A model generated the notes under the pieces. It was not told where the DNA came from, did not search any database, and worked only from the letters and a program-made list of their open reading frames with translations. From Octopus sinensis (lineage: Eukaryota), in contig NC_043010.1 in the NCBI RefSeq assembly GCF_006345805.1, forward strand, positions 25,978,001 to 26,042,000: DNA of 64,000 bases. The letters are read 5' to 3'. Positions 1-60,085 of the stretch are shown piece after piece. Position 1 is the first letter of the stretch. Every line of letters begins with the position of its first letter. Position numbers and translations under genes: made by a program.

Positions 1-250
1 GACCGGAAGCTGGGGCAACCGGAAGGGGTCAGCCGTCAGGCGTGCGCAGAGAGCGGGCAATTGCGCCTTTTCCAAAGTGGGCCGTGCAGGTGACAAGACG
101 TGTGAGGACGTCGCTAAGGGTTTGGGCTAGCAGCTGCTATCGTTAGTGTTCGGGTCGGGGCTGTGTGGAAGGACTGGTCACCACTGGAGGGTCTCCGTCA
201 CTAAGAAGAGAAGGTAGGTGCCTCTATATTCAAATCGCGCACACACTACA
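1..250 (+). repeat. 5' LTR (partial; about 44 bp missing upstream of the window)
   Basis: Matches 3902-4151, ends ...CACACTACA. Confidence 0.92.
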
Positions 251-262
251 AGCTATTTCGGC
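251..262 (+). promoter_or_regulatory. Putative non-canonical primer-binding site complementary to nt 1-12 of tRNA-Phe(GAA)
   Basis: AGCTATTTCGGC directly after the LTR is the reverse complement of GCCGAAATAGCT, the recalled 5' end of human/Drosophila tRNA-Phe; no TGG-type PBS is present. Confidence 0.6.
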
Positions 263-294
263 CGTTCTTAAACATTTACATTTTTTTCAACACG

Positions 295-1052
295 ATGTCT
301 GCAAAAATTAGGATCGCCAGTGACGTCGTCAGACCTTTTAATGGCGAAGGCGATGTAGTGGCCTGGATTCGCAAAATCAGGCTGGTGGCAAGACTGCAGG
401 GCATAAGTGACGTGGCGAGTCTTATGGCGCTGTACTTAGAAGGGAGCGCGTTAACGCTCTACCTAGAGATGGATGAAGAGGAACGGCTCAGCGAGGAGAA
501 TATAGAGCGACGCTTGCGTGATGCCTACACGGAATGCGAGTACACAGCTTTTGCTAAGCTAGGTGCAATCAGGTGGACGGGAGGCCAAGTGGATGACTTT
601 ACATCAGAAGTTAGAAGGCTAGCGACTCTGGCCGGGTTTGCGGGAGAAGGACTGGAGAGAGCAGCCCGACTGGCGTTCGTGAATGGGTTCCCCGACGATG
701 TAGGGATTCACCTACAACGACTGCCCGGGGTTAAAAAGATGCCGTTGAGCGAACTTGTAACTCAGGTTCGCGTGTTGACGAGACACTCTGGGCGGAAGGC
801 GATAGCGATGGCGGTGACGGAGGCGCGTAAAGACGTCCCGAGAAAGAGGTACAGAAGCTTACCGTGCAACGAGAGCGGCCGTTCTCAGGACGGTGTTTTA
901 GATGCCAGGGACCGCACATGGCGCGGGACTGTACGCAGCCGGGGCCCGTTTACTATCGATGCAGGCACACAGGGCACATTACCCGTGATTGCGACCAAGG
1001 AAACGACCGCGGGGAAGTTGCTGCCTCTCGAACTTTCCCCTCAAACGAGTAG
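295..1052 (+). pseudogene. gag: gag with two CCHC zinc knuckles, one frameshift between about 831 and 885
   Basis: ORF 295 capsid-like region; frame 864-1052 has CFRCQGPHMARDC and (Y)YRCRHTGHITRDC; TAA at 828-830 closes that frame upstream. Confidence 0.85.
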
Positions 1053-3844
1053 AGGCGCTATTGGAGACGCTGCCATTGATTGACGTGGAGGCCGAGGGGG
1101 AGACGTTCAAGGCCCTTGTGGATACGGGCTGTACGACCACCCTGGTGACTTCGAGGGTGACGAAGGAATGGAACGGGGTGAGTAGTGTCCGGGCGGTCGA
1201 CGGCAGCGAAATCCGTTGCAGAGGCAGCAGCAAGATAGAGATAGTGGTGCGCGGCGCGACGCTAAGGCTGCAGGCAATTGTGGCCGAACGCGTGATAGAT
1301 GGAGTTGATGTGGTGATGGGGATGGACGCCATCAACTGCCTCGGTGGCGTCAGTGTTGTGGGAAATGAGGTCACGTTCGGAAGCGTGGGGGCGTCGTGCA
1401 CTGCGAGTCAGGATCGCCAGAGAGAGCAGAGCCCCGCGAGGGACTGCGCCGCTTACACCATCGAGGACAAAGACTTTCAGGCGGCGTTCGATGGTCAGCG
1501 GTGGACGATAGAGTGGCGATGGAAGGACGAGCCCCCGACGCTGGAGAACAGGGTGAGCTGTTACCAGCATACCCTGAAAGGCCACGCCAGGGTCGAGTTT
1601 GAAGACGAGGTGGAAAGGTGGATCGAGGAAGGGGTCCTTGTCCCTTGGAAGGAGGAGGTAGCGGGCGGAGTGCTACCCCTGATGGCGGTGGTGCAGCCTA
1701 CGAAGGGAAAAGTCAGACCGGTACTGGACTTCAGGGAGCTAAACCAGCACATATCGTGTCACACGGGAAGTGAGGCGACAGACGTTTGTGGCGAGGCATT
1801 ACGTAAGTGGAGACAGTCGACTGAGGCAGCGACGATTGTCGACTTGAGATCGGCATACTTGCAGCTCCATGTGAGCGACAAACTGTGGCGATATCAGTTG
1901 GTGCGGTACAAGGGCCGGACGTACTGTCTAACCAGGCTGGGTTTCGGACTGAATTCCGCTCCGAAGATCATGGCGGCAGTGCTTAGGTCCGTCCTAGGGA
2001 AAGACGGCAAGATTAGAAAGGCCACCAGCTCCTACATTGACGACATTTTGGTGGACGAAACTGTAGTGCCAGTCGACGAGGTAGTTAGACATCTGGAGAA
2101 GTTCGGACTGATTGCTAAGCCACCGGAGTCGATTGAAGGGGGAGCCGCGCTGGGGCTGAAGCTGCAAAGAGATGGATCAGGTGAATTGGTGTTCCGGAGA
2201 GGAAATGAAATCCCAGAGCTGAGTTCCAGCGTCAGCAGGAGAGAGCTGTTCTCGGTGTGTGGGAAGTTGGTCGGTCACTACCCGATCGCTGGATGGCTGC
2301 GCATGGCGTGTAGTTACACCAAGAGACGAGCAGAAGGAGAGAGGTGGGGCGACAAGGTGGGAGAAGGGGCGGTGGCGATGATGCAGGAGATCCTAGAGAG
2401 GACAAGAGCGGAAGACCCGGTCAGGGGGAACTGGTACGTGCCCAATACGAAATGCGGGACCGTCTGGTGTGATGCTAGCAGTATAGCGATAGGGGTGGAG
2501 TTGGCAATCGAAGGCACTGCGGTGGAGGACGCGGCCTGGCTTCGGAGAGCAGATGATTTCAACCACATCAATGTCGCCGAATTAGACGCGCTGCTGAAAG
2601 GGGTGAACTTGGCCTTGAAATGGGGGCTGCGCACGATTGAAATCCGGACGGATTCGGCCACTGTGCTTGGCTGGGTAGGATCGGTGATCACCGGTGACAG
2701 GAGAGTGCGGACGAAAGGTGCTGCGGAGATGTTAGTGAAGCGCCGTCTAGGAGTTCTAGGTGAGTTCGGACTGATGCTGAACGTGGTTTTTCGTGCCTTC
2801 GGAGAAAAACAGGGCGGACGTACTGACCAGGGTGAAAAGAGCGTGGTTGGAAGAACCGGAGGAGGCCCGGAAAGGGATAGCTGCGACGTGTCGGTTGGAT
2901 GACTCTGAACTGAAGAAACTGCATGCTATGCATCACCTGGGTGTCGACAGGACCCTGTATCTGGCAAAAAAAAATTGATGCTGACGTCACTAGGAGAAGC
3001 GTCCGGAAGGTGGTCGGGAGCTGCGACAGGTGTCAGTCCATCGACCCTGCTCCGTGTGGGCATGAACAGGGAAGCCTTTCCGTGGAGCAGAACTGGAAAA
3101 GGCTAGCTGTGGATGTGACACACTACCGTCAGTGAATGTACCTCTCCATGGTCGACTGCGGGCCGGGCCGGCTGGCCATTTGGATGGAGTTGAGATCGGG
3201 CATTGCTGACGAGATCGCGCAGATCCTGAACGGGATATTTTTAGAGAGAGGTCCCGTGGAAGAACTACTGATGGACAACGGGGCGGCGTTTCGTTCGGAA
3301 GCATTGAGGGTTATGCTTGATCGGTGGAATGTGCGACGCTTGTTCAGAGCAGCGTATAGGCCGAGCGGTAACGGGATCGTGGAGAGGCACCATCGGACAG
3401 TCAAGGCCATAGCAGAAAGAGGGCACATTTCGCCGCTTGAAGCAGTTTTTTGGTACAACTTGTCTCCCCGATCCGGACAAGCTGAGGAATCTGTGCCGCA
3501 GAGAGCTGTGTTCAAATATGAATGGAGGCACCCGAGCAAAGCGCCGGAGGGTCACGAGGAAGAGAAGGGACCCGTTTGCGTGAAAATAGGGGAGGAAGTC
3601 TGGGTCAAGCTGTACGTCTCAATGGAGCAGAGGAACGGTGACGGCGATCAATTCCAGAAGCAACGTATCCGTAGATGGAACACCACGACACGTCTTGGAC
3701 CTTCGCAGGATTGTTGTTTCGACGGACGATGATTCTGGAGAGGGAGAGAACGAGGAGCCCAGCTTGAGAAGATCTCGACGAGCAAGGCGCTCTCCCAGTT
3801 GGATGGTGGACTACAACATGGAGCGGAGAGATTGTGATCTTTAA
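989..3844 (+). pseudogene. pol: pol: aspartic protease, RT, RNase H, integrase; frameshifts at about 2790, 2970 and 3610, nonsense codon 3133-3135
   Basis: LVDTG; VDLRSAYLQ, LGFGLNSAP, SYIDDILV; WCDAS..AEL..RTDS; HAMHH..CDRC; AVDVT..MDNG..IVERHH; LRRSRR..PSW..DY tail. Confidence 0.92.
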
Positions 3845-3857
3845 GATCAGGGTGGCG
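3843..3857 (+). promoter_or_regulatory. Probable polypurine tract
   Basis: AAGATCAGGGTGGCG (11 of 15 purines) immediately 5' of the TGT start of the 3' LTR. Confidence 0.45.
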
Positions 3858-4151
3858 TGTGGGATGACGTCAGCAGCTGGACGTCAGCAGCGCGGTGCGT
3901 TGACCGGAAGCTGGGGCAACCGGAAGGGGTCAGCCGTCAGGCGTGCGCAGAGAGCGGGCAATTGCGCCTTTTCCAACGTGGGTTGTGCAGGTGACAAGAC
4001 GTGTGAGGACGTCGCTAAGGGTTTGGGCTAGCAGCTGCTATCGTTAGTGTTCGGGTCGGGGCTGTGTGGAAGGACTGGTCACCACTGGAGGGTCTCCGTC
4101 ATTAAGAAGAGAAGGTAGGTGCCTCTATATTCAAATCGCGCACACACTACA
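3858..4151 (+). repeat. 3' LTR, 294 bp, TGT...ACA termini
   Basis: Starts TGTGGG after the PPT, ends CTACA; direct repeat of 1-250. Confidence 0.88.
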
Positions 4152-4560
4152 ACTGTGACATGCAACGTTGAACAAATTAGTTTAGATTCTTTAATACAAT
4201 AATAAATTTTTTTTTTAACCCAGCTATCAATAAAGATGGATGAGGGATGGATAAAGGAAATTTTACTGAATGGGAAGGAATTTAAAAAGTAGTGAACATT
4301 GCAAGGGAGATAACTCCCCAGCTTTGTTGGCCACATATGTTTGAAACTCTTTTCAAGAATTTATTTTATTTGGAGAGAACATATATATATTATCCTTTAT
4401 TAATTTATCTGACATGATATATATATTTCTTGATTTCAGAAGAAGCAGAAGTCTTGCAGCGTTAAGAAGATATTGAATGCAGATATGATTTATCTATGGA
4501 GTTGTTTAAGAATAACCTTATATGGTTATAAAATTTTGCAAAGGAAAAGTTTATATTTAC

Positions 4561-4774
4561 TCTTTACTCTTTTACTTGTTTCAGTCATTTGACTGTGGCC
4601 ATGCTGGGGCACTGCCTTTAGTCGAGCAAATCGACCCCAGGATTTATTCTTTGTAAGCCTAGTACTTATTCTATCGGTCTTTCTTTTGCCGAACTGCTAA
4701 GTTACGGGGACGTAAACACACCAGCATCAGTTGTCAAGCGATGTTGGGGGAAAAACACAGACACACAAACATAC

Positions 4775-4814
<40 letters not shown>

Positions 4815-5010
4815 ACACACACACACACACAAACACATATATATATATGACGGGCTTCTTTCAGTTTCCGATTACCAAATCCACTCACAAGGCTTTGGTC
4901 AGCCCGAGGCTATAGTAGAAGACACTTCCCCAAGGTGCCATGCAGTGGGACTGAATCCGGAACCATGTGGTTGGTAAGCAAGCTATTTACTACACAGCCA
5001 TTCCTGCGCC
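4561..5010 (-). mobile_element. tRNA-derived composite SINE, family 1 (CR1-type tail)
   Basis: tRNA-like head (GGCTGTGTRGTAAG..GGTTCCGG..TTCAGTCCC), internal (CA)n, tail GGCRGTGC..CAGCATGGCCACAGTCAAATGACTGAAAC-(AAGAGTA)n; many copies in the window. Confidence 0.8.
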
Positions 5011-5414
5011 TTGTATGAATACGTTATTATTGTATTATTATTGTATGAATACGTTATTATAAGTAATTGTTTTATTAGTCCATGGAAAACATAAAGCACA
5101 TTGTACGATTTGGACTCAGAACTGTAACAAAAATCCCCAGATAAGGCGATAGCAAGAATAAAAAAAAGCACTTGAATATCTCGTTTTTATGAGTGTATGA
5201 TGAGCAATGAGCTTGGCAGAAACCATCACCTTTCAAACAACTTCGGTTCTCCTAATGTTCGGGTAAATTTGAACTAAGCGCTATAAGTTAAAGAAGTATA
5301 ACAGCATTAAGTTGCACTAATCAATGATACTCATTCACATCTATGCAGGCTTTTATAAGGAAATACCCTACAACAAATCACCAGCCATTTGCCTAACAAC
5401 TTTGTATGTTGCAG

Positions 5415-9002: not shown

Positions 9003-9494
9003 GGTGTTTTTTACGTGCCACCTGCACAGGTGCCAGGCGATGCTGGCAATGGACACGAACGGATGGTGCTTTTACGTGCCACCGACACGGGGCCAGACAG
9101 AGCTGGCAAACGGCCACGAACGGACGGTGCTTTTACGTGTCAGCGGCACGGGGGCCAGCCGAGGCTGGCAACGGACACGAACGGATGGTGCTTTTACGTG
9201 CCACCGACACGGGGCCAGACAGAGCTGGCAAACGGCCACGAACGGATGGTGCTTTTACGTGCCACCGACACGGGGCCAGACAGAGCTGGCAAACGGCCAC
9301 GAACGGACGGTGCTTTTACGTGTCACCGGCACGGGGCCAGGCGAGGCTGGCAACGAACACAAACGGATGGTGCTTTTACGTGCCACCGACACGGGGCCAG
9401 GCAGAGCTGGCAAACGGCCACGAGCGAATGGTGCTTTTTACGTATCACCGGCACGGGTGCCAGATGAGGCTGACAGCGGACACGAACGGATGGG
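9003..9494. repeat. About 8 tandem units of 60-62 bp in the RTE 3' UTR
   Basis: Unit GGCAA(A)CGG(A/C)CACGAACGGA(T/C)GGTGCTTTTACGTG..CACCG(A/G)CACGGGGCCAG..(G)AG(G)CT. Confidence 0.92.
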
Positions 9495-9540: not shown

Positions 9541-12324
9541 TCACTGGTCTTGCCGGGTCTTCTCACGCACAGCATACTTCCATAGGTCTCGGTCTCTGGT
9601 CATTTCCTTGGTGAGACCTAGAGTTCGAAGGTCGTGCTTCACCACCTCGACCCAGGTTTTCCTGGGTCTACCTCTTCCACAGGTCCCCTCAACTGCCAGG
9701 GTGTGGCACTTTTTCACACACCTATCTTCATCCATTCTCACCACATGACCATACCAGCGCAATCGTCTCTCTTGCACACAACATCTGATTCCTCTTAGGT
9801 CCAACTTTTCTCTCAAGGTACTTACACTCTGTCGACTATGAACACTGACATTACACATCCAACGGAGCATACTGGCTTCGTTTCTCGCGAGCTTACGCAT
9901 GTCCTCAGCAGTCACGGCCCATGTTTCACTGCCATGTAGCATGGCTGTTCGTACACATGCATCATACAGTCTGCCTTTTACTCTGAGCGAGAGGCCTTTA
10001 GTCACCAACAGAGGTAAGAGCTCCCTAAACTTTGCCCAGGCTATTCTTACTCTAGCCGTTACACTTTCAGCACACCCACCCCCACTACTGACTTGGTCAC
10101 CAAGATAACGGAAGCTATCAACTACTTCTAGTTTTTCCCCCTGGAAAGTGACGGAAGTTGTTTTCTGTAGATTTTCAGAGGTTAATCTGCCACATACAAA
10201 AACCATCTTCCTAGTTAGCCTTCCTATGACATTACTGCACCTCTTATGTGTCCATAGCTTACACTTGGTGCATCTTATAGAGTTTCTACCTACACCTTTT
10301 CTACAGATCGAGCAGGGCCATCAACCTGAAGGCGTTTGTGATTTGTCTACCTTCCTACTTATTAGGACTTTGGTTTTAGCTAGGTTGACTCTAAGGTCCT
10401 TCGATTCTAAACCATGCTTCCACACCTGAAACTTCTTCTCCAGTTCTGATAATGACTCAGCAATTAGAGCAAGGTCATCAGCATAGAGGAGCTCCCAGGG
10501 GCATCCTGTCTTGAATTCCTCTGTTATTGCCTGGAGGACTATGATAAATAGGAGGGGGCTGAGGACTGAGCCTTGGTGGACCCCTACCTCTACCCGGAAT
10601 TCTTCACTGTACTCATTTACAACCCTCACCTTACTAGCAGCGTCCCTGTACATGGCTTGCACAGCTCTCACTAACCATTCATCTATTCCTAGTTTCCTCA
10701 TTGACCACCATATGAGGGATCGGGGGACCCTGTCGAAGGCTTTCTCCATGTCAACAAAAGCCAGGTACAGGGGCTTATCTTTGGCTAGGTATTTCTCCTG
10801 CAGCTGCCTTACCAGGAATATAGCATCAGTGGTACTTTTCCCTGGCACGAAACCAAACTGCATCTCATCTAAACTAACTCTCTCTCTAATTAGTTGGCTT
10901 ATGACCCTCTCTGTAACCTTCATCACCTGATCCAACAGCTTGATACCTCTGTAATTATTTGTATCTAGGGCATCACCTTTACCTTTGTAGCAGTTGACTA
11001 TTATGCTGCTACACCAGTCATTGGGTATGACTCCTTCATGTATCACCTGATTAACTATACAGGTGACTAGGCTATAGCCGACACTACCAGATATTTTGAG
11101 CATCCCTGCAGTGATACCTGATGGGCCTGGGGCTTTCCCTGTCTTCATGCTTCTAATTGCCTTAGCTACTAAGGAACTATCAACCCTGATAGCTGGTCCC
11201 TCTGTTGGGTCAACGTTCGGCAGACTCTCTTTATCCCATTCATTTTCTTTATTCAGCAACCTTTCATAGTGGCGTCTCCAAGCCTCTCTCTTTGCATCCT
11301 CGTTTAGCGCAAGTGAACCATCTTCCATGCGAACACACTTCTCTCCCACCACATCACAATTCTCTCTCACACACTGTCTTGCAACGCGAAACACCTCCAG
11401 TCTTTGGTCCTCACGGCGCAGAACATTGGCAAATTTTTTCTTATCTGCTTCCCCTCTGGCTAGATAGACCTGTCTCCTAGCTTCCCTTTTAGCAGTCTGA
11501 TACAATTCCCTGCTACCACCATTCTTCCAGTGCTTCCAAGTCTGTCTCTTTTCTCTAATAGCCCTGTCTACGACACTGTTCCACCACCACGTTACCTTGG
11601 GACGAGAGGGGACTTTGCACCAGCCACAGATCTGGTCAGTGGCTCTCAGCAGGTTGTCCCTTAGAAACGTCCAGTTGTCCTCTACCCCATGTGATACTCT
11701 ATCCCCTTCTACTTCGTCAAAGGCTTCAAGTAACATGTCTCTAAATCTCTGTCCATTCACAGGATCCTTAAGCTTCCAGATCCTTCTTCTCCATGTTGGT
11801 CGTCTTCTGGTTGTCCTCCTACTCCTGATCCTAAAGTCACTAACTACCAGTCTATGTTGTGGGGTGCATTCTTCGCCTGGGAAGGTTTTGGCATTTATAA
11901 GTAGCCATCTCTCCCTTTGCCTGGCAAGGATGTAGTCAATTTGGCTGGTATGTTGGCCCGATCGGTAGGTGACTAGGTGGCTGGTAGGTTTCCTGAAGTT
12001 AGTGTTGCAAATCATAAGATTATTTGCATCGCAGAACTCCAGCAGCCTGGTTCCCTCCTCGTTGCGGGAACCAGAGCCATAGCCTCCATGTACGCCGTGG
12101 AAGCCCCCAGCATGTCGTCCAACGTGACCATTGAAGTCACCAGCCACAAAGAGAAGGTCTCTGTCGTTCGTCAACGAGGTAGTCTGCAGTAGAGTGTCAT
12201 AGAATCGGTCTTTCTGTCCATCAGGTAGCCCCGACTGAGGAGCATAGGCTGATATAATGGTTGCTAAACTATGATGAAGCGCTAATCTAATCTTAAGTAT
12301 TCTGTCGCATACTCTGATTACCAT
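9541..12324 (-). pseudogene. RTE ORF2 (APE-RT with PHD-like finger), one nonsense codon at 10321-10323
   Basis: ORFs 10321-12324 and 9541-10206 are in the same frame; sister copies at about 26277 and 28134 have AGA where this copy has TGA. Confidence 0.88.
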
Positions 12325-29440: not shown

Positions 29441-29775
29441 TATACATCATCATCATCATCGTTTAACGTCTGTTTTCCATGATAGCATGGGTTGGACGGA
29501 CAGTCAGACCGGGGTCTGGGAAGCCAGGAGGCTGCACCAGGCTCCAGTCTGATCTGGCAGTGTTTCTACAGCTGGATGGCCTTCCTAACACCAACCACTC
29601 CGTGAGTGTAGTGGGTGCTTTTTACGTGCCAGGCGAGGCTAGCAATGGCCACAATTGGTTGGTGCTTTTTACGTGTCACCGGCACAGGTATCACAACTAC
29701 AATTTCCATTTGATATGTATATACACACATCAGTTAAAACATTCACTGGTATTAAGGTATGTGTGTATATATATA

Positions 29776-38667: not shown

Positions 38668-39410
38668 CTTTTACTTGTTTCAGTCACTTGACTGCGGCCA
38701 TGCTGGAGCACCGTCTTCAGTCAAGTAAATTGACCCCCAGAACTTATTCTTTGTAAGCCGAGCACTTATTCTATCAGTCTCTTTTGCCGAACCGCTAAGT
38801 TACGGGGACATAAACACACCACCATTGGTTGTCAAGCGATGTTGGGGGGACAAACACATATATATATATACATATATGATGAGCTTCTTTCAGTTTCCAT
38901 CTACCAAATCCACTCACAAGGCTTTGGTCGGCCCAAAGCTATAGTAGAAGATACATGCCCAAGGTGCCAAACCTGGAACCATGTGGTTGGTAATCAAGCT
39001 ACATACCACACAGCTACTCCTGTGCCTTTTGTGTATTACTCTCTTTCTCTTTTACTCATTGCAGTCATTTGACTGTGGCCATGCTGGAGCACCACCTTTA
39101 GTTGAGCAAATTGACCCCAGGACTTATTTTTTGTAAGCCTAGTACTTATTCTATCGGCTTCTTTTGCTGAACCGCTAAGTTACGGGGATGTAAACACACC
39201 AGCATCCATTGTCAAGCAATATTGGGGGAGGGGGGGAAACAGAGACACACATACATACGATGGGCTTCTTTCAGTTTCCATTTACCAAATCCACTCACAA
39301 GGCTTTGGTTGGCCCAAAGCTATAGTAGAAGATACTTGCCCAAGTTGCCACGCAGTGGGACTGAACCTAGAACCATGTGGTTGGTAAGCAAGCTACTTAC
39401 CACACAGCCA
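38668..39410 (-). mobile_element. Two tandem SINE family 1 copies
   Basis: 38668-39035 and 39048-39410 match 4561-5010; further copies at about 36380, 52555, 57425, 59540 and 63105. Confidence 0.8.
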
Positions 39411-39598
39411 AGTATAACAAATTGATTGCAGATAAATTTTTTAACAACAAATTCTTCTATGGATCCCTAAGGTTCATACAGATCCCAGTAAAGAACTACT
39501 AGTCTAGAAGACTGGAAACATGACACCACTTGTATGACGGTGATACTTGTTTACAACAATCACATGCACATATATTTGTACAGCTATATACAAATATA

Positions 39599-57045: not shown

Positions 57046-57904
57046 CCACCATCAACTTTATTATCTTCACAATGTCAAGAGACATCACATCACATGTCTG
57101 AATGGTTGAGCAGCTGTTTCAACATCCTGTAATAATTCTATAGAAGCCGTGTGAGGTGGAAGCTTCCTGGACAGAGAAGCCATGCTATGTGTTGTTTAGT
57201 AAGTAATTTCCTTCCAAGTCCATGGTCAGTTTCCCTCTAATAATTCATTCCACAATTTCATTTATATGTGAAATCAAAGGCATAAGGCATATTATGCTTT
57301 CTTTTAATCTTTTTGTTTTTGAATTTGCTATGTGCAAGGAAGTTTTGGGAAAGTGTCTGAAGTGATTTTCCAAAACCTGTTCACATGTTTTTAAGAGAAT
57401 TGGGGCTTTTATTTTTTTATCTTTTACATGTTTCAGTCATGAAACTGCAACCATGCTGGAGCACTTCCTTGAAGAATTTTAGTTGAATCAACCCCAGTAC
57501 TTTTTTTTTTTAAGCCTGGTACTTTTTCTGTCCATCTCTTTTGCTAAACTGCTAAGTTACGGAGATGTAGACACATTAACACCAGTTGTTAAGTGGTGGC
57601 AGGTGACAAATACAGACACACATATATACAATGGGCTTCTTTCAGTTTCCGTCTACGAAATCCACTTACAAAGCTTTGCTTGGCCTAATGCTATAGAAGA
57701 CACTTGCCCAAGGCGCCCCACACTGGGACTGATCCTGGAACTGTGTGGTTGGTAAGCAAACTTCTTACCACACAACCACACTTGTACCTCTATGGCTGAT
57801 ATATTACATCTTCATTGATGATGATGAGGTTATCAATCAATGGTTGCCATTTCTTCATGTTGAGCTGTAGTGTTGAAGAACTGATCTGGTTGGTTTACTT
57901 TTAA

Positions 57905-59510: not shown

Positions 59511-59734
59511 GATAGGTGAAAATCTTTTTTTAATTCTTTTATTTGTTTGTCATTTGACTGTGGCTATGCTAGAGCACCGCCTTTAGTCGAGCAAATCAAC
59601 CCCAGGACTTATTCTTTGTAAGCCTAGTACTTATTCTATTGGCCTCTTTTGCCAAACCACTAAGTGACGGGGACGTAAACACACCAGCATCAGTTGTCAA
59701 ACGATGTTGGGGAGACAAACACAGACACACAAAC

Positions 59735-59776
<42 letters not shown>

Positions 59777-60085
59777 ACGGGCTTCTTTCAGTTTTCGTCT
59801 ACCAAATCCAATCACAAGGCTTTGGTCGGCCAGAGGTTATAGTAGAAGACACCTGCCCAAGGTGCCATGCAATGGGACTGAACCCGGAACTATGTACTTA
59901 CCACACAGCCACTCCTGCATACTGCATATTTAAAAAAAATATTTTTATAATTTGTATATATTTTATTATAAATGCAAAACAACAGAGAAATCGGCATAAG
60001 CTTAAATAATAAACCGCAATACGGCAAGAGAATACTGTATATACATATACACAGACACTCATATACACACACACACACACATATA

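What the first reader, a model, noticed from the sequence alone, without database searches (positions are those of the whole stretch)
245..270. LTR element appears to prime from a 5' fragment of tRNA-Phe rather than a tRNA 3' end
Seen: the LTR ends at CTACA (250) and is followed directly by AGCTATTTCGGC, with no TGG. Known: metazoan tRNA-Phe(GAA) starts GCCGAAATAGCT (recalled from human/Drosophila), a 12/12 complement. Canonical PBSs pair with the CCA 3' end; copia/Ty5 use a cleaved tRNA-iMet half; Tf1 self-primes with an 11-nt 5' fragment cut by its own RNase H. Inference: the PBS displaces the tRNA-Phe acceptor stem, and the tRNA is cut near nt 10-12 (possibly by the element's RNase H, Tf1-style but in trans) to give the primer. 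The LTR itself lacks GCCGAAATAGC, which argues against self-priming. I do not recall this priming mode being described.
Basis: partly seen in the sequence, partly recalled or inferred. Interest (0 to 1): 0.85.

Follow-up and report, generated by a model that had tools for sequence, protein, structure and literature searches.

The report
Retroelement primer site matching tRNA 5' end
A dead copy of a small retrovirus-like mobile element carries, exactly where such elements bind the host tRNA that starts their DNA copying, a 12-base site that pairs with the first 12 bases of tRNA-Phe instead of the tRNA's tail, and the same sharply bounded site is kept in every relative examined, which points to a way of starting reverse transcription that I could not find described.

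Summary
The 5' LTR ends at 250 (..ACA). Bases 251-262, AGCTATTTCGGC, are the exact complement of tRNA-Phe(GAA) nt 1-12, as printed for Drosophila and human.

It is not chance. All 38 loci that hold the LTR-gag junction (about 31 distinct elements) carry a 12-nt block right after the LTR terminus. These come from two octopod-type sequences, crab, mantis shrimp and many environmental eukaryotes. Their Pol is 40-63% identical to the window's. Conservation is 93-100% at columns +1..+6 and +9..+12 and falls to background at -4 and +13, so the block ends at the complement of tRNA nt 1.

About a dozen distinct elements keep the Phe-type block. One has the exact complement of tRNA-Lys3 nt 1-12. The other variants differ mainly opposite tRNA nt 4-6, and their partner RNAs are unidentified.

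No element contains a complement of its own block, so Tf1-type self-priming is not supported. No TGG follows the LTR, so canonical 3'-end priming is absent.

Best reading: a 12-nt 5' tRNA fragment ending at U12 primes minus-strand synthesis. Who makes the cut is an inference; the element's RNase H, as in Tf1, is my preferred guess.

This copy is dead: pol has 3 frameshifts and 1 stop. I found no prior description.

The parts
1..250 (+). 5' LTR, cut by the window start (about 43 nt missing, judged from the 3' LTR); ends ..ACTACA
   Evidence: 1-250 aligns to 3902-4151 with 4 mismatches. The ACA terminus is 93-96% conserved in 28 relatives.
251..262 (+). 12-nt primer-binding block AGCTATTTCGGC, exact complement of tRNA-Phe(GAA) nt 1-12
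   Evidence: unique in the window. tRNA-Phe 5' sequence from papers. Same position and bounds in all 38 loci that hold the junction.
295..1083 (+). gag ORF (262 aa), starts 32 nt after the block
   Evidence: gag relatives, some with zf-CCHC. In relatives gag starts 0-51 nt after the block.
989..3814 (+). pol (protease, reverse transcriptase, DUF7047, RNase H, integrase). Broken gene: 3 frameshifts and 1 in-frame stop relative to intact relatives, no large deletion.
   Evidence: ORFs. Pfam. tblastn with six intact relatives gives the same counts. Span.
3845..3858 (+). purine-rich tract before the 3' LTR (putative polypurine tract)
   Evidence: Read directly. The tract and the LTR start TGTGG.. 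resemble those of L001 and L002. Bounds are approximate.
3859..4151 (+). 3' LTR (about 293 nt, TGT...ACA)
   Evidence: The 5' bound is inferred from likeness to the PPT/LTR starts of relatives, because the 5' LTR start lies outside the window.

Best explanation
Bases 251-262 are the minus-strand primer-binding site of a compact (about 4.2 kb) retrovirus-like LTR element. The element belongs to a large, apparently unnamed family. Unlike canonical sites, this one pairs with the first 12 nucleotides of a host tRNA (acceptor-stem 5' strand, U8, A9 and the first three D-stem bases). The tRNA is tRNA-Phe(GAA) in this copy and in about a dozen relatives, tRNA-Lys3 in one relative, and other unidentified RNAs of the form GCC-NNN-ATAGCT in the rest. 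The LTR ends immediately before the block, so the primer's 3'-OH must sit on tRNA nt 12. The tRNA must therefore be cut between nt 12 and 13, or a 12-nt 5' fragment must already exist. The plus strand then copies the 12-nt RNA to the tRNA's natural 5' end, which explains why conservation stops exactly at the complement of nt 1. Shown: the complementarity, the position, the sharp bounds, the family-wide conservation, and the absence of a cis complement and of a canonical site. Inferred: that the tRNA fragment is the primer in vivo. Also inferred: that the cut is made at the end of the 12-bp RNA duplex by the element's own RNase H, by analogy with Tf1, whose RNase H cuts an 11-bp RNA duplex. The window copy itself is a dead relic.
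For: Exact 12/12 complement to documented tRNA-Phe nt 1-12. The block directly abuts the LTR in the window and in L002, L003, L004, L016 and L053, where both LTRs are present. Every one of the 38 loci that contain the LTR-gag junction has a block. The 17 loci without one all lack the junction. Column shares over 28 non-redundant junctions: ACA 93-96%; +1..+6 and +9..+12 93-100%; +7 and +8 variable; -4 and +13 onward at background, 32-61%. The elements are otherwise very diverged: Pol is 40-63% identical and the flanks are unalignable. The Phe-type block is spread over the whole RT tree. L053 has the exact complement of tRNA-Lys3 nt 1-12. gag starts 0-51 nt after the block, in two elements immediately after it, so there is no room for an 18-nt site. 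No TGG within 15 nt in 0 of 28. No complement of the own block (2 or fewer mismatches in 12, or any exact 9-mer) anywhere in 31 elements. Block-to-LTR duplex energies are no better than shuffles in 20 of 22. The family encodes an RNase H domain next to RT. Young copies with 100% identical LTRs (L001, L002) keep the block.
Against: There is no biochemical evidence. No primer or strong-stop molecule has been seen. The host of the window is not identified, and its tRNA-Phe was not read. Most block variants have no identified partner RNA: CGC, CCC, CAC and CTA at +7..+9, and four singletons. The crab and mantis-shrimp variant (AGCTATCTAGGC) would mismatch the fly/human tRNA-Phe at two positions, so another RNA must serve there, or crustacean tRNA-Phe differs. 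A 12-nt 5' tRNA fragment ending inside the D stem is not a commonly reported tRNA fragment class (my knowledge). Cleavage of a tRNA in trans by a retroelement RNase H has no precedent that I found. tRNA base modifications within nt 1-12 could hinder pairing or copying.
Confidence: 0.75

Rival explanations
1. Tf1/sushi-type self-priming: the 5' end of the element's own transcript folds back on the block and is cut to give the primer. On this reading the likeness to tRNA-Phe is incidental.
For: The duplex length (12) is close to Tf1's 11, and self-priming is widespread (PMC4600332; PMC6317226). L001 has a near-complement (3 mismatches in 12) about 140 nt upstream of its block.
Against: No complement of the own block (2 or fewer mismatches, or an exact 9-mer) exists anywhere in 31 elements, many with the complete LTR. 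Duplex energies equal those of shuffles in 20 of 22. The L001 and L003 outliers are at the level expected by chance: about 0.13 per LTR for 3 or fewer mismatches, by my calculation. The window's LTR has nothing comparable. Exact matches to two different documented tRNAs would be unexplained.
Confidence: 0.03
2. The primer is a host RNA other than a tRNA, or a tRNA-like transcript, whose natural 3' end reads ...GCCNNNAUAGCU, so no cleavage is needed.
For: This would explain the variants that match no tRNA sequence I could document, and it avoids an unprecedented cut.
Against: No such RNA is known to me. The block ends exactly at the complement of tRNA nt 1, and two variants equal the 5' ends of two different tRNAs over all 12 positions. 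An RNA ending in the first 12 nt of a tRNA would itself be a 5' tRNA fragment, which merges with the main explanation.
Confidence: 0.08
3. The block is a conserved cis element with another role (packaging, dimerisation, translation control, or a decoy that sequesters or mimics the tRNA acceptor strand). On this reading priming happens elsewhere or otherwise.
For: Conservation alone does not prove priming. The block's last 7 bases have the sense of the tRNA acceptor 3' strand, so mimicry is conceivable.
Against: Its position is fixed to the LTR end but variable (0-51 nt) relative to the gag start. No other candidate primer site exists in the 0-51 nt leader, and no TGG is present. The LTR boundary itself marks where minus-strand synthesis began, and it lies at the block's first base. 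No Rfam family matches. Local folding is no more stable than shuffles.
Confidence: 0.1
4. Chance resemblance in a decayed element.
For: The copy is dead, and 12 nt is short.
Against: A given 12-mer at a given place has probability about 6e-8. Allowing about 50 tRNA families, that is about 3e-6 (my calculation). The same block is found in about 31 diverged elements, including copies with identical LTRs.
Confidence: 0.01

Closest known systems
Canonical tRNA priming of retroviruses and LTR retrotransposons (site complementary to the 3'-terminal 8-18 nt of a host tRNA, including CCA)
   Same: The site lies directly 3' of U5. A host tRNA is the partner. Different family members use different tRNAs. 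The site is regenerated from the primer.
   Different: Here the complement is to tRNA nt 1-12, the opposite strand of the acceptor stem. There is no TGG. The natural tRNA 3'-OH cannot be the priming end, so a cut after nt 12 is required. The site is only 12 nt long and ends at the tRNA's 5' terminus.
Tf1/Tf2/Tj1/sushi self-priming (first 11 nt of the element's own mRNA pair with the site; RNase H of RT cuts the RNA duplex; PMC4600332 and the references cited there)
   Same: A short 5'-terminal RNA segment (11 vs 12 nt) is the primer. An endonucleolytic cut at the end of an RNA-RNA duplex is needed. The site is short.
   Different: The primer would come in trans from a host tRNA. No complementary sequence exists in the element. 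No chromodomain was found in three full-length relatives.
Half-tRNA priming of copia, Ty5 and some plant Ty1/copia lineages (5' part of tRNA-iMet or tRNA-Ile cut in the anticodon loop; PMC5371799, PMC6317226)
   Same: A 5' fragment of a host tRNA, made by internal cleavage, is the primer.
   Different: There the cut is in the anticodon loop (fragment of about 39 nt), and the site pairs with the anticodon-stem region. Here the cut would be in the D stem after nt 12, and the site pairs with the very 5' end. The domain order here is PR-RT-RH-IN, not the copia order.
Retrovirus-like pol lineages (Odin retrotransposons, lokiretroviruses; PMC9040795)
   Same: gag-pol without env, and an extra domain (DUF7047) between RT and RNase H. 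The nearest solved integrase and RT sequences are retroviral.
   Different: Odin was reported only from sea anemones after a screen of 1,710 protostome genomes, whereas this family is in cephalopods and crustaceans. Whether DUF7047 is a degenerate RNase H was not tested. That paper says nothing about primer sites.

Membership tests
LTR retroelement (retrovirus-like) | Direct long terminal repeats with TG..CA ends flanking gag-pol | tested here: met
   1-250 vs 3902-4151, 98.4% identical. TGT..ACA ends. Relatives have 96-100% identical LTR pairs.
LTR retroelement (retrovirus-like) | pol with protease, reverse transcriptase, RNase H and integrase | tested here: met
   Pfam hits on the window ORFs and on three intact relatives. 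Structure model and Foldseek. The gene is broken in the window copy.
LTR retroelement (retrovirus-like) | Target-site duplication | tested here: inconclusive
   Not testable in the window, because the 5' end lies outside it. 5-bp duplications are seen in L001 (TCAGT) and L002 (TAAAC).
Canonical tRNA 3'-end priming | Site next to U5 that starts TGG and complements the tRNA 3' end | tested here: not met
   No TGG within 15 nt of the LTR end in 0 of 28 junctions. The block has the sense of the acceptor 3' strand, not its complement.
Tf1/sushi self-priming group | Site complementary to the 5' end of the element's own transcript (a sequence inside the LTR) | tested here: not met
   No complement in 31 elements. 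Duplex energies equal those of shuffles.
Tf1/sushi self-priming group | Chromodomain at the integrase C-terminus | tested here: not met
   No chromodomain hit in P0001, P0015 or P0097. Only three proteins were scanned.
Tf1/sushi self-priming group | RNase H of RT cleaves the RNA-RNA duplex to free the primer | not testable with these tools
   This is a biochemical property. Only the presence of an RNase H domain is shown.
Half-tRNA priming (copia/Ty5 type) | Site complementary to the anticodon stem-loop region of tRNA-iMet (or tRNA-Ile), with the cut in the anticodon loop | tested here: not met
   The complement is to nt 1-12 of tRNA-Phe or tRNA-Lys3. The domain order has integrase last.
Ty3/gypsy (Metaviridae) | Domain order PR-RT-RH-IN | tested here: met
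Ty3/gypsy (Metaviridae) | RT groups with Ty3/gypsy RTs | tested here: inconclusive
   Sequence searches of solved structures return gamma-, spuma- and lentiviral RTs and betaretroviral integrase. They do not return Ty3 RT, even at E up to 1. No phylogeny with reference sets was possible.
Odin / retrovirus-type dual RNase H lineages | Degenerate RNase H 'tether' between RT and a second RNase H | not tested
   DUF7047 sits between RT and RNase H. Its fold was not compared separately.

The most novel reading that the evidence does not exclude
A large, widespread and so far unnamed lineage of compact retrovirus-like elements (cephalopods, crustaceans, many environmental eukaryotes) starts reverse transcription from the first 12 nucleotides of host tRNAs: Phe, Lys3 and others sharing GCC...ATAGCT. 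The primer is freed by a cut after nt 12 of a tRNA bound in trans. This would be a fourth priming mode beside 3'-end tRNA, half-tRNA and self-priming, and a plausible evolutionary bridge between tRNA priming and Tf1-type self-priming.
Probability: 0.55. Interest if true: 0.85.

Novelty: new variant of a known kind. Interest (0 to 1): 0.8.

Why it matters
How LTR retroelements choose and prepare their primer is a defining step of their replication. Only a few modes are listed in the reviews I could read: the native tRNA 3' end, bipartite sites, half-tRNA cut in the anticodon loop, and self-priming (PMC5371799, PMC6317226).

A family-wide site for the extreme 5' end of tRNAs would add a mode. 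It would imply an endonucleolytic cut inside the D stem of a host tRNA, and it would link tRNA priming with Tf1-type self-priming. It also bears on tRNA-fragment biology, because 5' fragments rather than 3' fragments would interact with these elements.

There is a practical consequence too. Annotation tools that look only for tRNA 3'-end complements will report 'no PBS' for this whole family.

Tried and rejected
- **Self-priming.** I searched each of 31 elements for the reverse complement of its own block (2 or fewer mismatches, or an exact 9-mer) and found none. RNAduplex of the block against 330 nt upstream, compared with shuffles, gave no signal in 20 of 22. The two outliers are at chance level.
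- **Canonical site.** No TGG follows the LTR in any of 28 junctions.
- **Host tRNA-Phe.** There is no tRNA gene in the window. Only one tRNA gene (Val) turned up in all fetched loci. No eukaryotic tRNA collection was available.
- **Host identity.** The window's gag and LINE proteins are not on record. gag relatives are at most 53% identical and unnamed.
- **Identity of the other block variants.** A full-text search for six variant 5' sequences gave only unrelated primers. A table of human tRNA fragments has none of them.
- **IMG/VR.** There are no relatives in it.
- **Literature.** Ten searches found no description of a site complementary to a tRNA 5' end. The string AGCTATTTCGGC appears only inside antisense tRNA-Phe probes. 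Levin 1995 (PMC230564) is not held.
- **Local RNA structure around the block.** It is no more stable than shuffles. There is no Rfam match in 1-4300.
- **Classification as Odin or Ty3/gypsy.** Left open.
- **Target-site idea.** I considered that the block might be flanking target DNA from insertion into a tRNA gene. I rejected this because the block lies inside the element, between the 5' LTR and gag.

Full report
**What is in the window**

The window opens inside the 5' LTR of a small LTR retroelement. Bases 1-250 align with 3902-4151 at 98.4% identity, 4 mismatches. Both copies end ...CACACACTACA. After the 3' copy, unrelated DNA follows.

By likeness of the purine-rich tract and the LTR start to relatives, the 3' LTR spans about 3859-4151 (about 293 nt, TGT...ACA). 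About 43 nt of the 5' LTR therefore lie outside the window.

Between the LTRs lie:
- a gag ORF at 295-1083;
- a pol region at about 989-3814, with protease, a weakly scoring RVT_1 reverse transcriptase, DUF7047, an RNase H (RVT_3/RNase_H) and an integrase core.

Against six intact relatives, the window's pol shows three frameshifts and one in-frame stop, with no large deletion. The copy is a relic.

**The observation**

Directly after the LTR terminus come bases 251-262, AGCTATTTCGGC.
- The 12-mer is unique in the window, and its reverse complement is absent.
- With one mismatch allowed, 0.16 matches per shuffled window are expected.
- No TGG follows the LTR.

The tRNA side of the claim can be cited rather than recalled:
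- A Drosophila tRNA-Phe(GAA) 5' Northern probe reads GCTCTCCCAACTGAGCTATTTCGGC (PMC7038984).
- Human tRNA-Phe forward primers read GCCGAAATAGCTCAGTTGGGAG(A) (PMC10505166; PMC2175372).
- A human 5' fragment starts the same way (PMC12025293).

The block is thus the exact complement of tRNA-Phe nt 1-12. The human reverse primer TGGTGCCGAAACCCGG shows what a canonical tRNA-Phe site would look like. It is not present.

The window's own host was not identified, and the window has no tRNA gene. That its tRNA-Phe starts the same way is an inference from the fly-human identity. The closest named relative comes from the octopod Argonauta hians.

**Relatives**

The pol ORF finds hundreds of relatives:
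- 690 in the word-indexed search;
- 496 clusters at 50% identity with E below 1e-30 in the exhaustive search.

Typical members have a Pol of about 950 aa on contigs of about 4 kb. Named sources are Argonauta hians, the crab Petrolisthes manimaculis and the mantis shrimp Oratosquilla oratoria. The rest are ENA, Logan and JGI assemblies.

I fetched 55 loci. Many 4-kb metagenome contigs have identical ends. That is the expected assembly collapse of two LTRs into a circle.

**The block in the family**

Every one of the 38 loci that contain the LTR-gag junction carries a 12-nt block directly after the LTR end (about 31 distinct elements including the window). The 17 loci without a block all lack the junction: they hold no gag, or only its C-terminal part.

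Column shares over 28 non-redundant junctions:

| Columns (relative to the block's first base) | Conservation |
|---|---|
| -3..-1 (ACA, the LTR end) | 93-96% |
| +1..+6 | 93-100% |
| +7 and +8 | 57% and 54% |
| +9..+12 | 93-100% |
| -4 and upstream; +13 onward | 32-71% (mostly under 60%) |

The block is therefore exactly 12 nt long. It ends at the complement of tRNA nt 1.

gag starts 0-51 nt after the block, and in two elements immediately after it. A longer site has no room.

The elements are otherwise far apart. Pol is 40-63% identical to the window's, and the LTRs and leaders cannot be aligned.

**Block variants, as they stand**

| Block | Found in |
|---|---|
| AGCTATTTCGGC (Phe type) | window, L001 (Argonauta, 100% identical LTRs), L005, L006, L012, L015, L016, L019/20, L029, L034, L035, L036, L047 |
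| AGCTATCGCGGC | seven elements |
| AGCTATCCCGGC | two groups |
| AGCTATCACGGC | two |
| AGCTATCTAGGC | crab, mantis shrimp, L054 |
| AGCTATCCGGGC | L053 |
| AGCTACCTCGGC, AGCTATCGCTGC, AGCTATCACGCG, AGCGAACGCGGC | one each |

The L053 block is the exact complement of the human tRNA-Lys3 forward primer GCCCGGATAGCTCAGTCG over nt 1-12. Two different documented tRNAs are thus matched over all 12 positions by different family members.

On an RT neighbour-joining tree, the Phe type is spread over all branches and the variants are interspersed. This suggests an old Phe-type state with repeated primer switches.

For the other variants I could not find the partner RNA. The crustacean variant would mismatch fly/human tRNA-Phe at two positions. 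Another tRNA, or a divergent tRNA-Phe, must be assumed there. This is the main open point.

**Alternatives**

- **Self-priming.** Tf1-type self-priming requires a sequence in the LTR that is complementary to the site (PMC4600332). No element has a complement of its own block with up to 2 mismatches, nor any exact 9-mer of it, anywhere on the coding strand. The best block-to-LTR duplex equals that of shuffled blocks in 20 of 22 elements. The two outliers are a 3-mismatch match in L001 and a G:U-rich match in L003. These are expected by chance at about 0.13 per LTR.
- **Known RNA family or stable local fold.** Neither is present.
- **Flanking target DNA.** The block is internal to the element, so it is not target DNA.

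**Mechanism**

The LTR boundary marks the first base copied from the primer. It lies at the block's first base, so the primer must end ...UAGCU-3', that is, at tRNA nt 12.
- The tRNA's own 3' end (CCA) cannot pair there.
- tRNA nt 13-15 (CAG) are not complementary to the conserved ACA.

A cut between nt 12 and 13, in the 5' strand of the D stem, or a pre-existing 12-nt fragment, is therefore needed.

The nearest precedent is Tf1. There, an 11-nt 5' segment paired to the site is freed by the RNase H of RT cutting an RNA duplex (references in PMC4600332). The family encodes an RNase H next to its RT. I therefore favour a Tf1-like cut acting in trans. This step is inference only.

Copying of the 12-nt RNA to the tRNA's natural 5' end during plus-strand synthesis would explain the sharp 3' bound of the block.

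The near-invariance of the columns opposite tRNA nt 1-3 and 7-12, against free change opposite nt 5-6 and occasional change opposite nt 4, suggests that only tRNAs sharing GCC...ATAGCT can be adopted.

**What the family is**

- The domain order is PR-RT-DUF7047-RH-IN.
- Among solved structures, the closest sequence matches are mouse mammary tumour virus integrase (E 2e-17) and gamma-, spuma- and lentiviral RTs. Ty3 RT is not retrieved even at E up to 1.
- An AlphaFold model of the window's 637-aa pol ORF (pLDDT 78.5) matches foamy-virus PR-RT, HIV-1 RT and cauliflower mosaic virus RT best.
- No chromodomain was found.
- Odin retrotransposons share the gag-pol-only, dual-domain look. However, they were reported only from sea anemones after a screen that included protostomes, and that paper does not mention primer sites.

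I leave the family unclassified within the retrovirus-like elements.

**Novelty**

- Ten full-text searches found no description of a primer site complementary to a tRNA 5' end.
- The block's string occurs only in antisense tRNA-Phe probes.
- A 2017 review lists four modes: native 3' end, bipartite sites, Tf1's tRNA-independent mode, and the half-tRNA of copia and Ty5.
- A survey of plant elements lists 3'-end, half-tRNA and self-priming, or none.

Subscription-only papers were not searchable, so an earlier description cannot be excluded.

**Verdict**

- The cut and its agent remain hypothetical.
- The functional proof lies outside what this report may propose. tRNA annotation of the host genomes, and a search for chimeric RNA-DNA reads in existing libraries, are the best descriptive tests.

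Noticed in passing
L003 2095-2167 (-) and L052 8095-8167 (-), Oratosquilla oratoria: A tRNA-Val(CAC) gene lies about 195 bp from the start of the element's 5' LTR, with its 5' end facing the element. It is the only tRNA gene found in any fetched locus. It could hint at insertion near RNA polymerase III genes, or it could be chance.
   Followed up: partly
window 9541-12324 (-): A 667-aa ORF with an endonuclease (Exo_endo_phos_2) and an RVT_1 reverse transcriptase: a non-LTR (LINE-type) retrotransposon. A 221-aa ORF with no family hit lies next to it.
   Followed up: partly
window 9003-9493: A tandem array of about eight copies of a 61-bp G+C-rich unit. A related single copy lies at 29599-29662.
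   Followed up: no
window 4584-5016, 38684-39426, 57537-57794, 59549-59943 and others: Dispersed repeat families of 100-190 nt at 62-92% identity (SINE-like), often ending in (CA)n or (TA)n runs. There are long (TA)n tracts around 24.5-25.2 kb and 27.6 kb. One copy sits about 430 bp downstream of the element's 3' LTR.
   Followed up: no
L001 2625-2975 and 6681-7031 (Argonauta hians): The 100% identical LTRs end ..ATCAAG rather than ..ACA, yet the Phe-type block follows directly, and a 5-bp duplication (TCAGT) flanks the element. The LTR also holds GCCGTGATAGC about 140 nt upstream of the block. This is a 3-mismatch near-complement that equals the complement of another family variant. I judged it to be chance.
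   Followed up: partly
L008, L009, L014, L019, L020, L022, L029, L036 and other metagenome loci: Contigs of 3.7-5 kb whose two ends are identical over 99-960 nt. This is the circular assembly path expected when the two LTRs of a multicopy element collapse. The family may therefore be mistaken for circular genomes in metagenome surveys.
   Followed up: partly
L053 1-948 and 3825-4772: A 948-nt segment repeated at 100% identity that includes the end of pol as well as the LTR. This suggests a tandem arrangement of two elements sharing an LTR, or an assembly artefact.
   Followed up: no
L053 1680-1683, L054 929-932; window 989-1083: In intact relatives the pol ORF starts with an ATG that overlaps the gag stop by 4 nt. 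L004 has a 12-nt gap instead. In a few proteins gag and pol are fused (P0097). In the window the two ORFs overlap in different frames. How pol is expressed in this family is unclear.
   Followed up: no
pol of the family (alignment A1; window 2237-2410 for DUF7047): The Pfam domain of unknown function DUF7047 sits between RT and RNase H in all members. The nearest solved integrase is that of a betaretrovirus, not Ty3. The family may be a retrovirus-like lineage that has no name in the literature I could search (no paper mentions DUF7047).
   Followed up: partly
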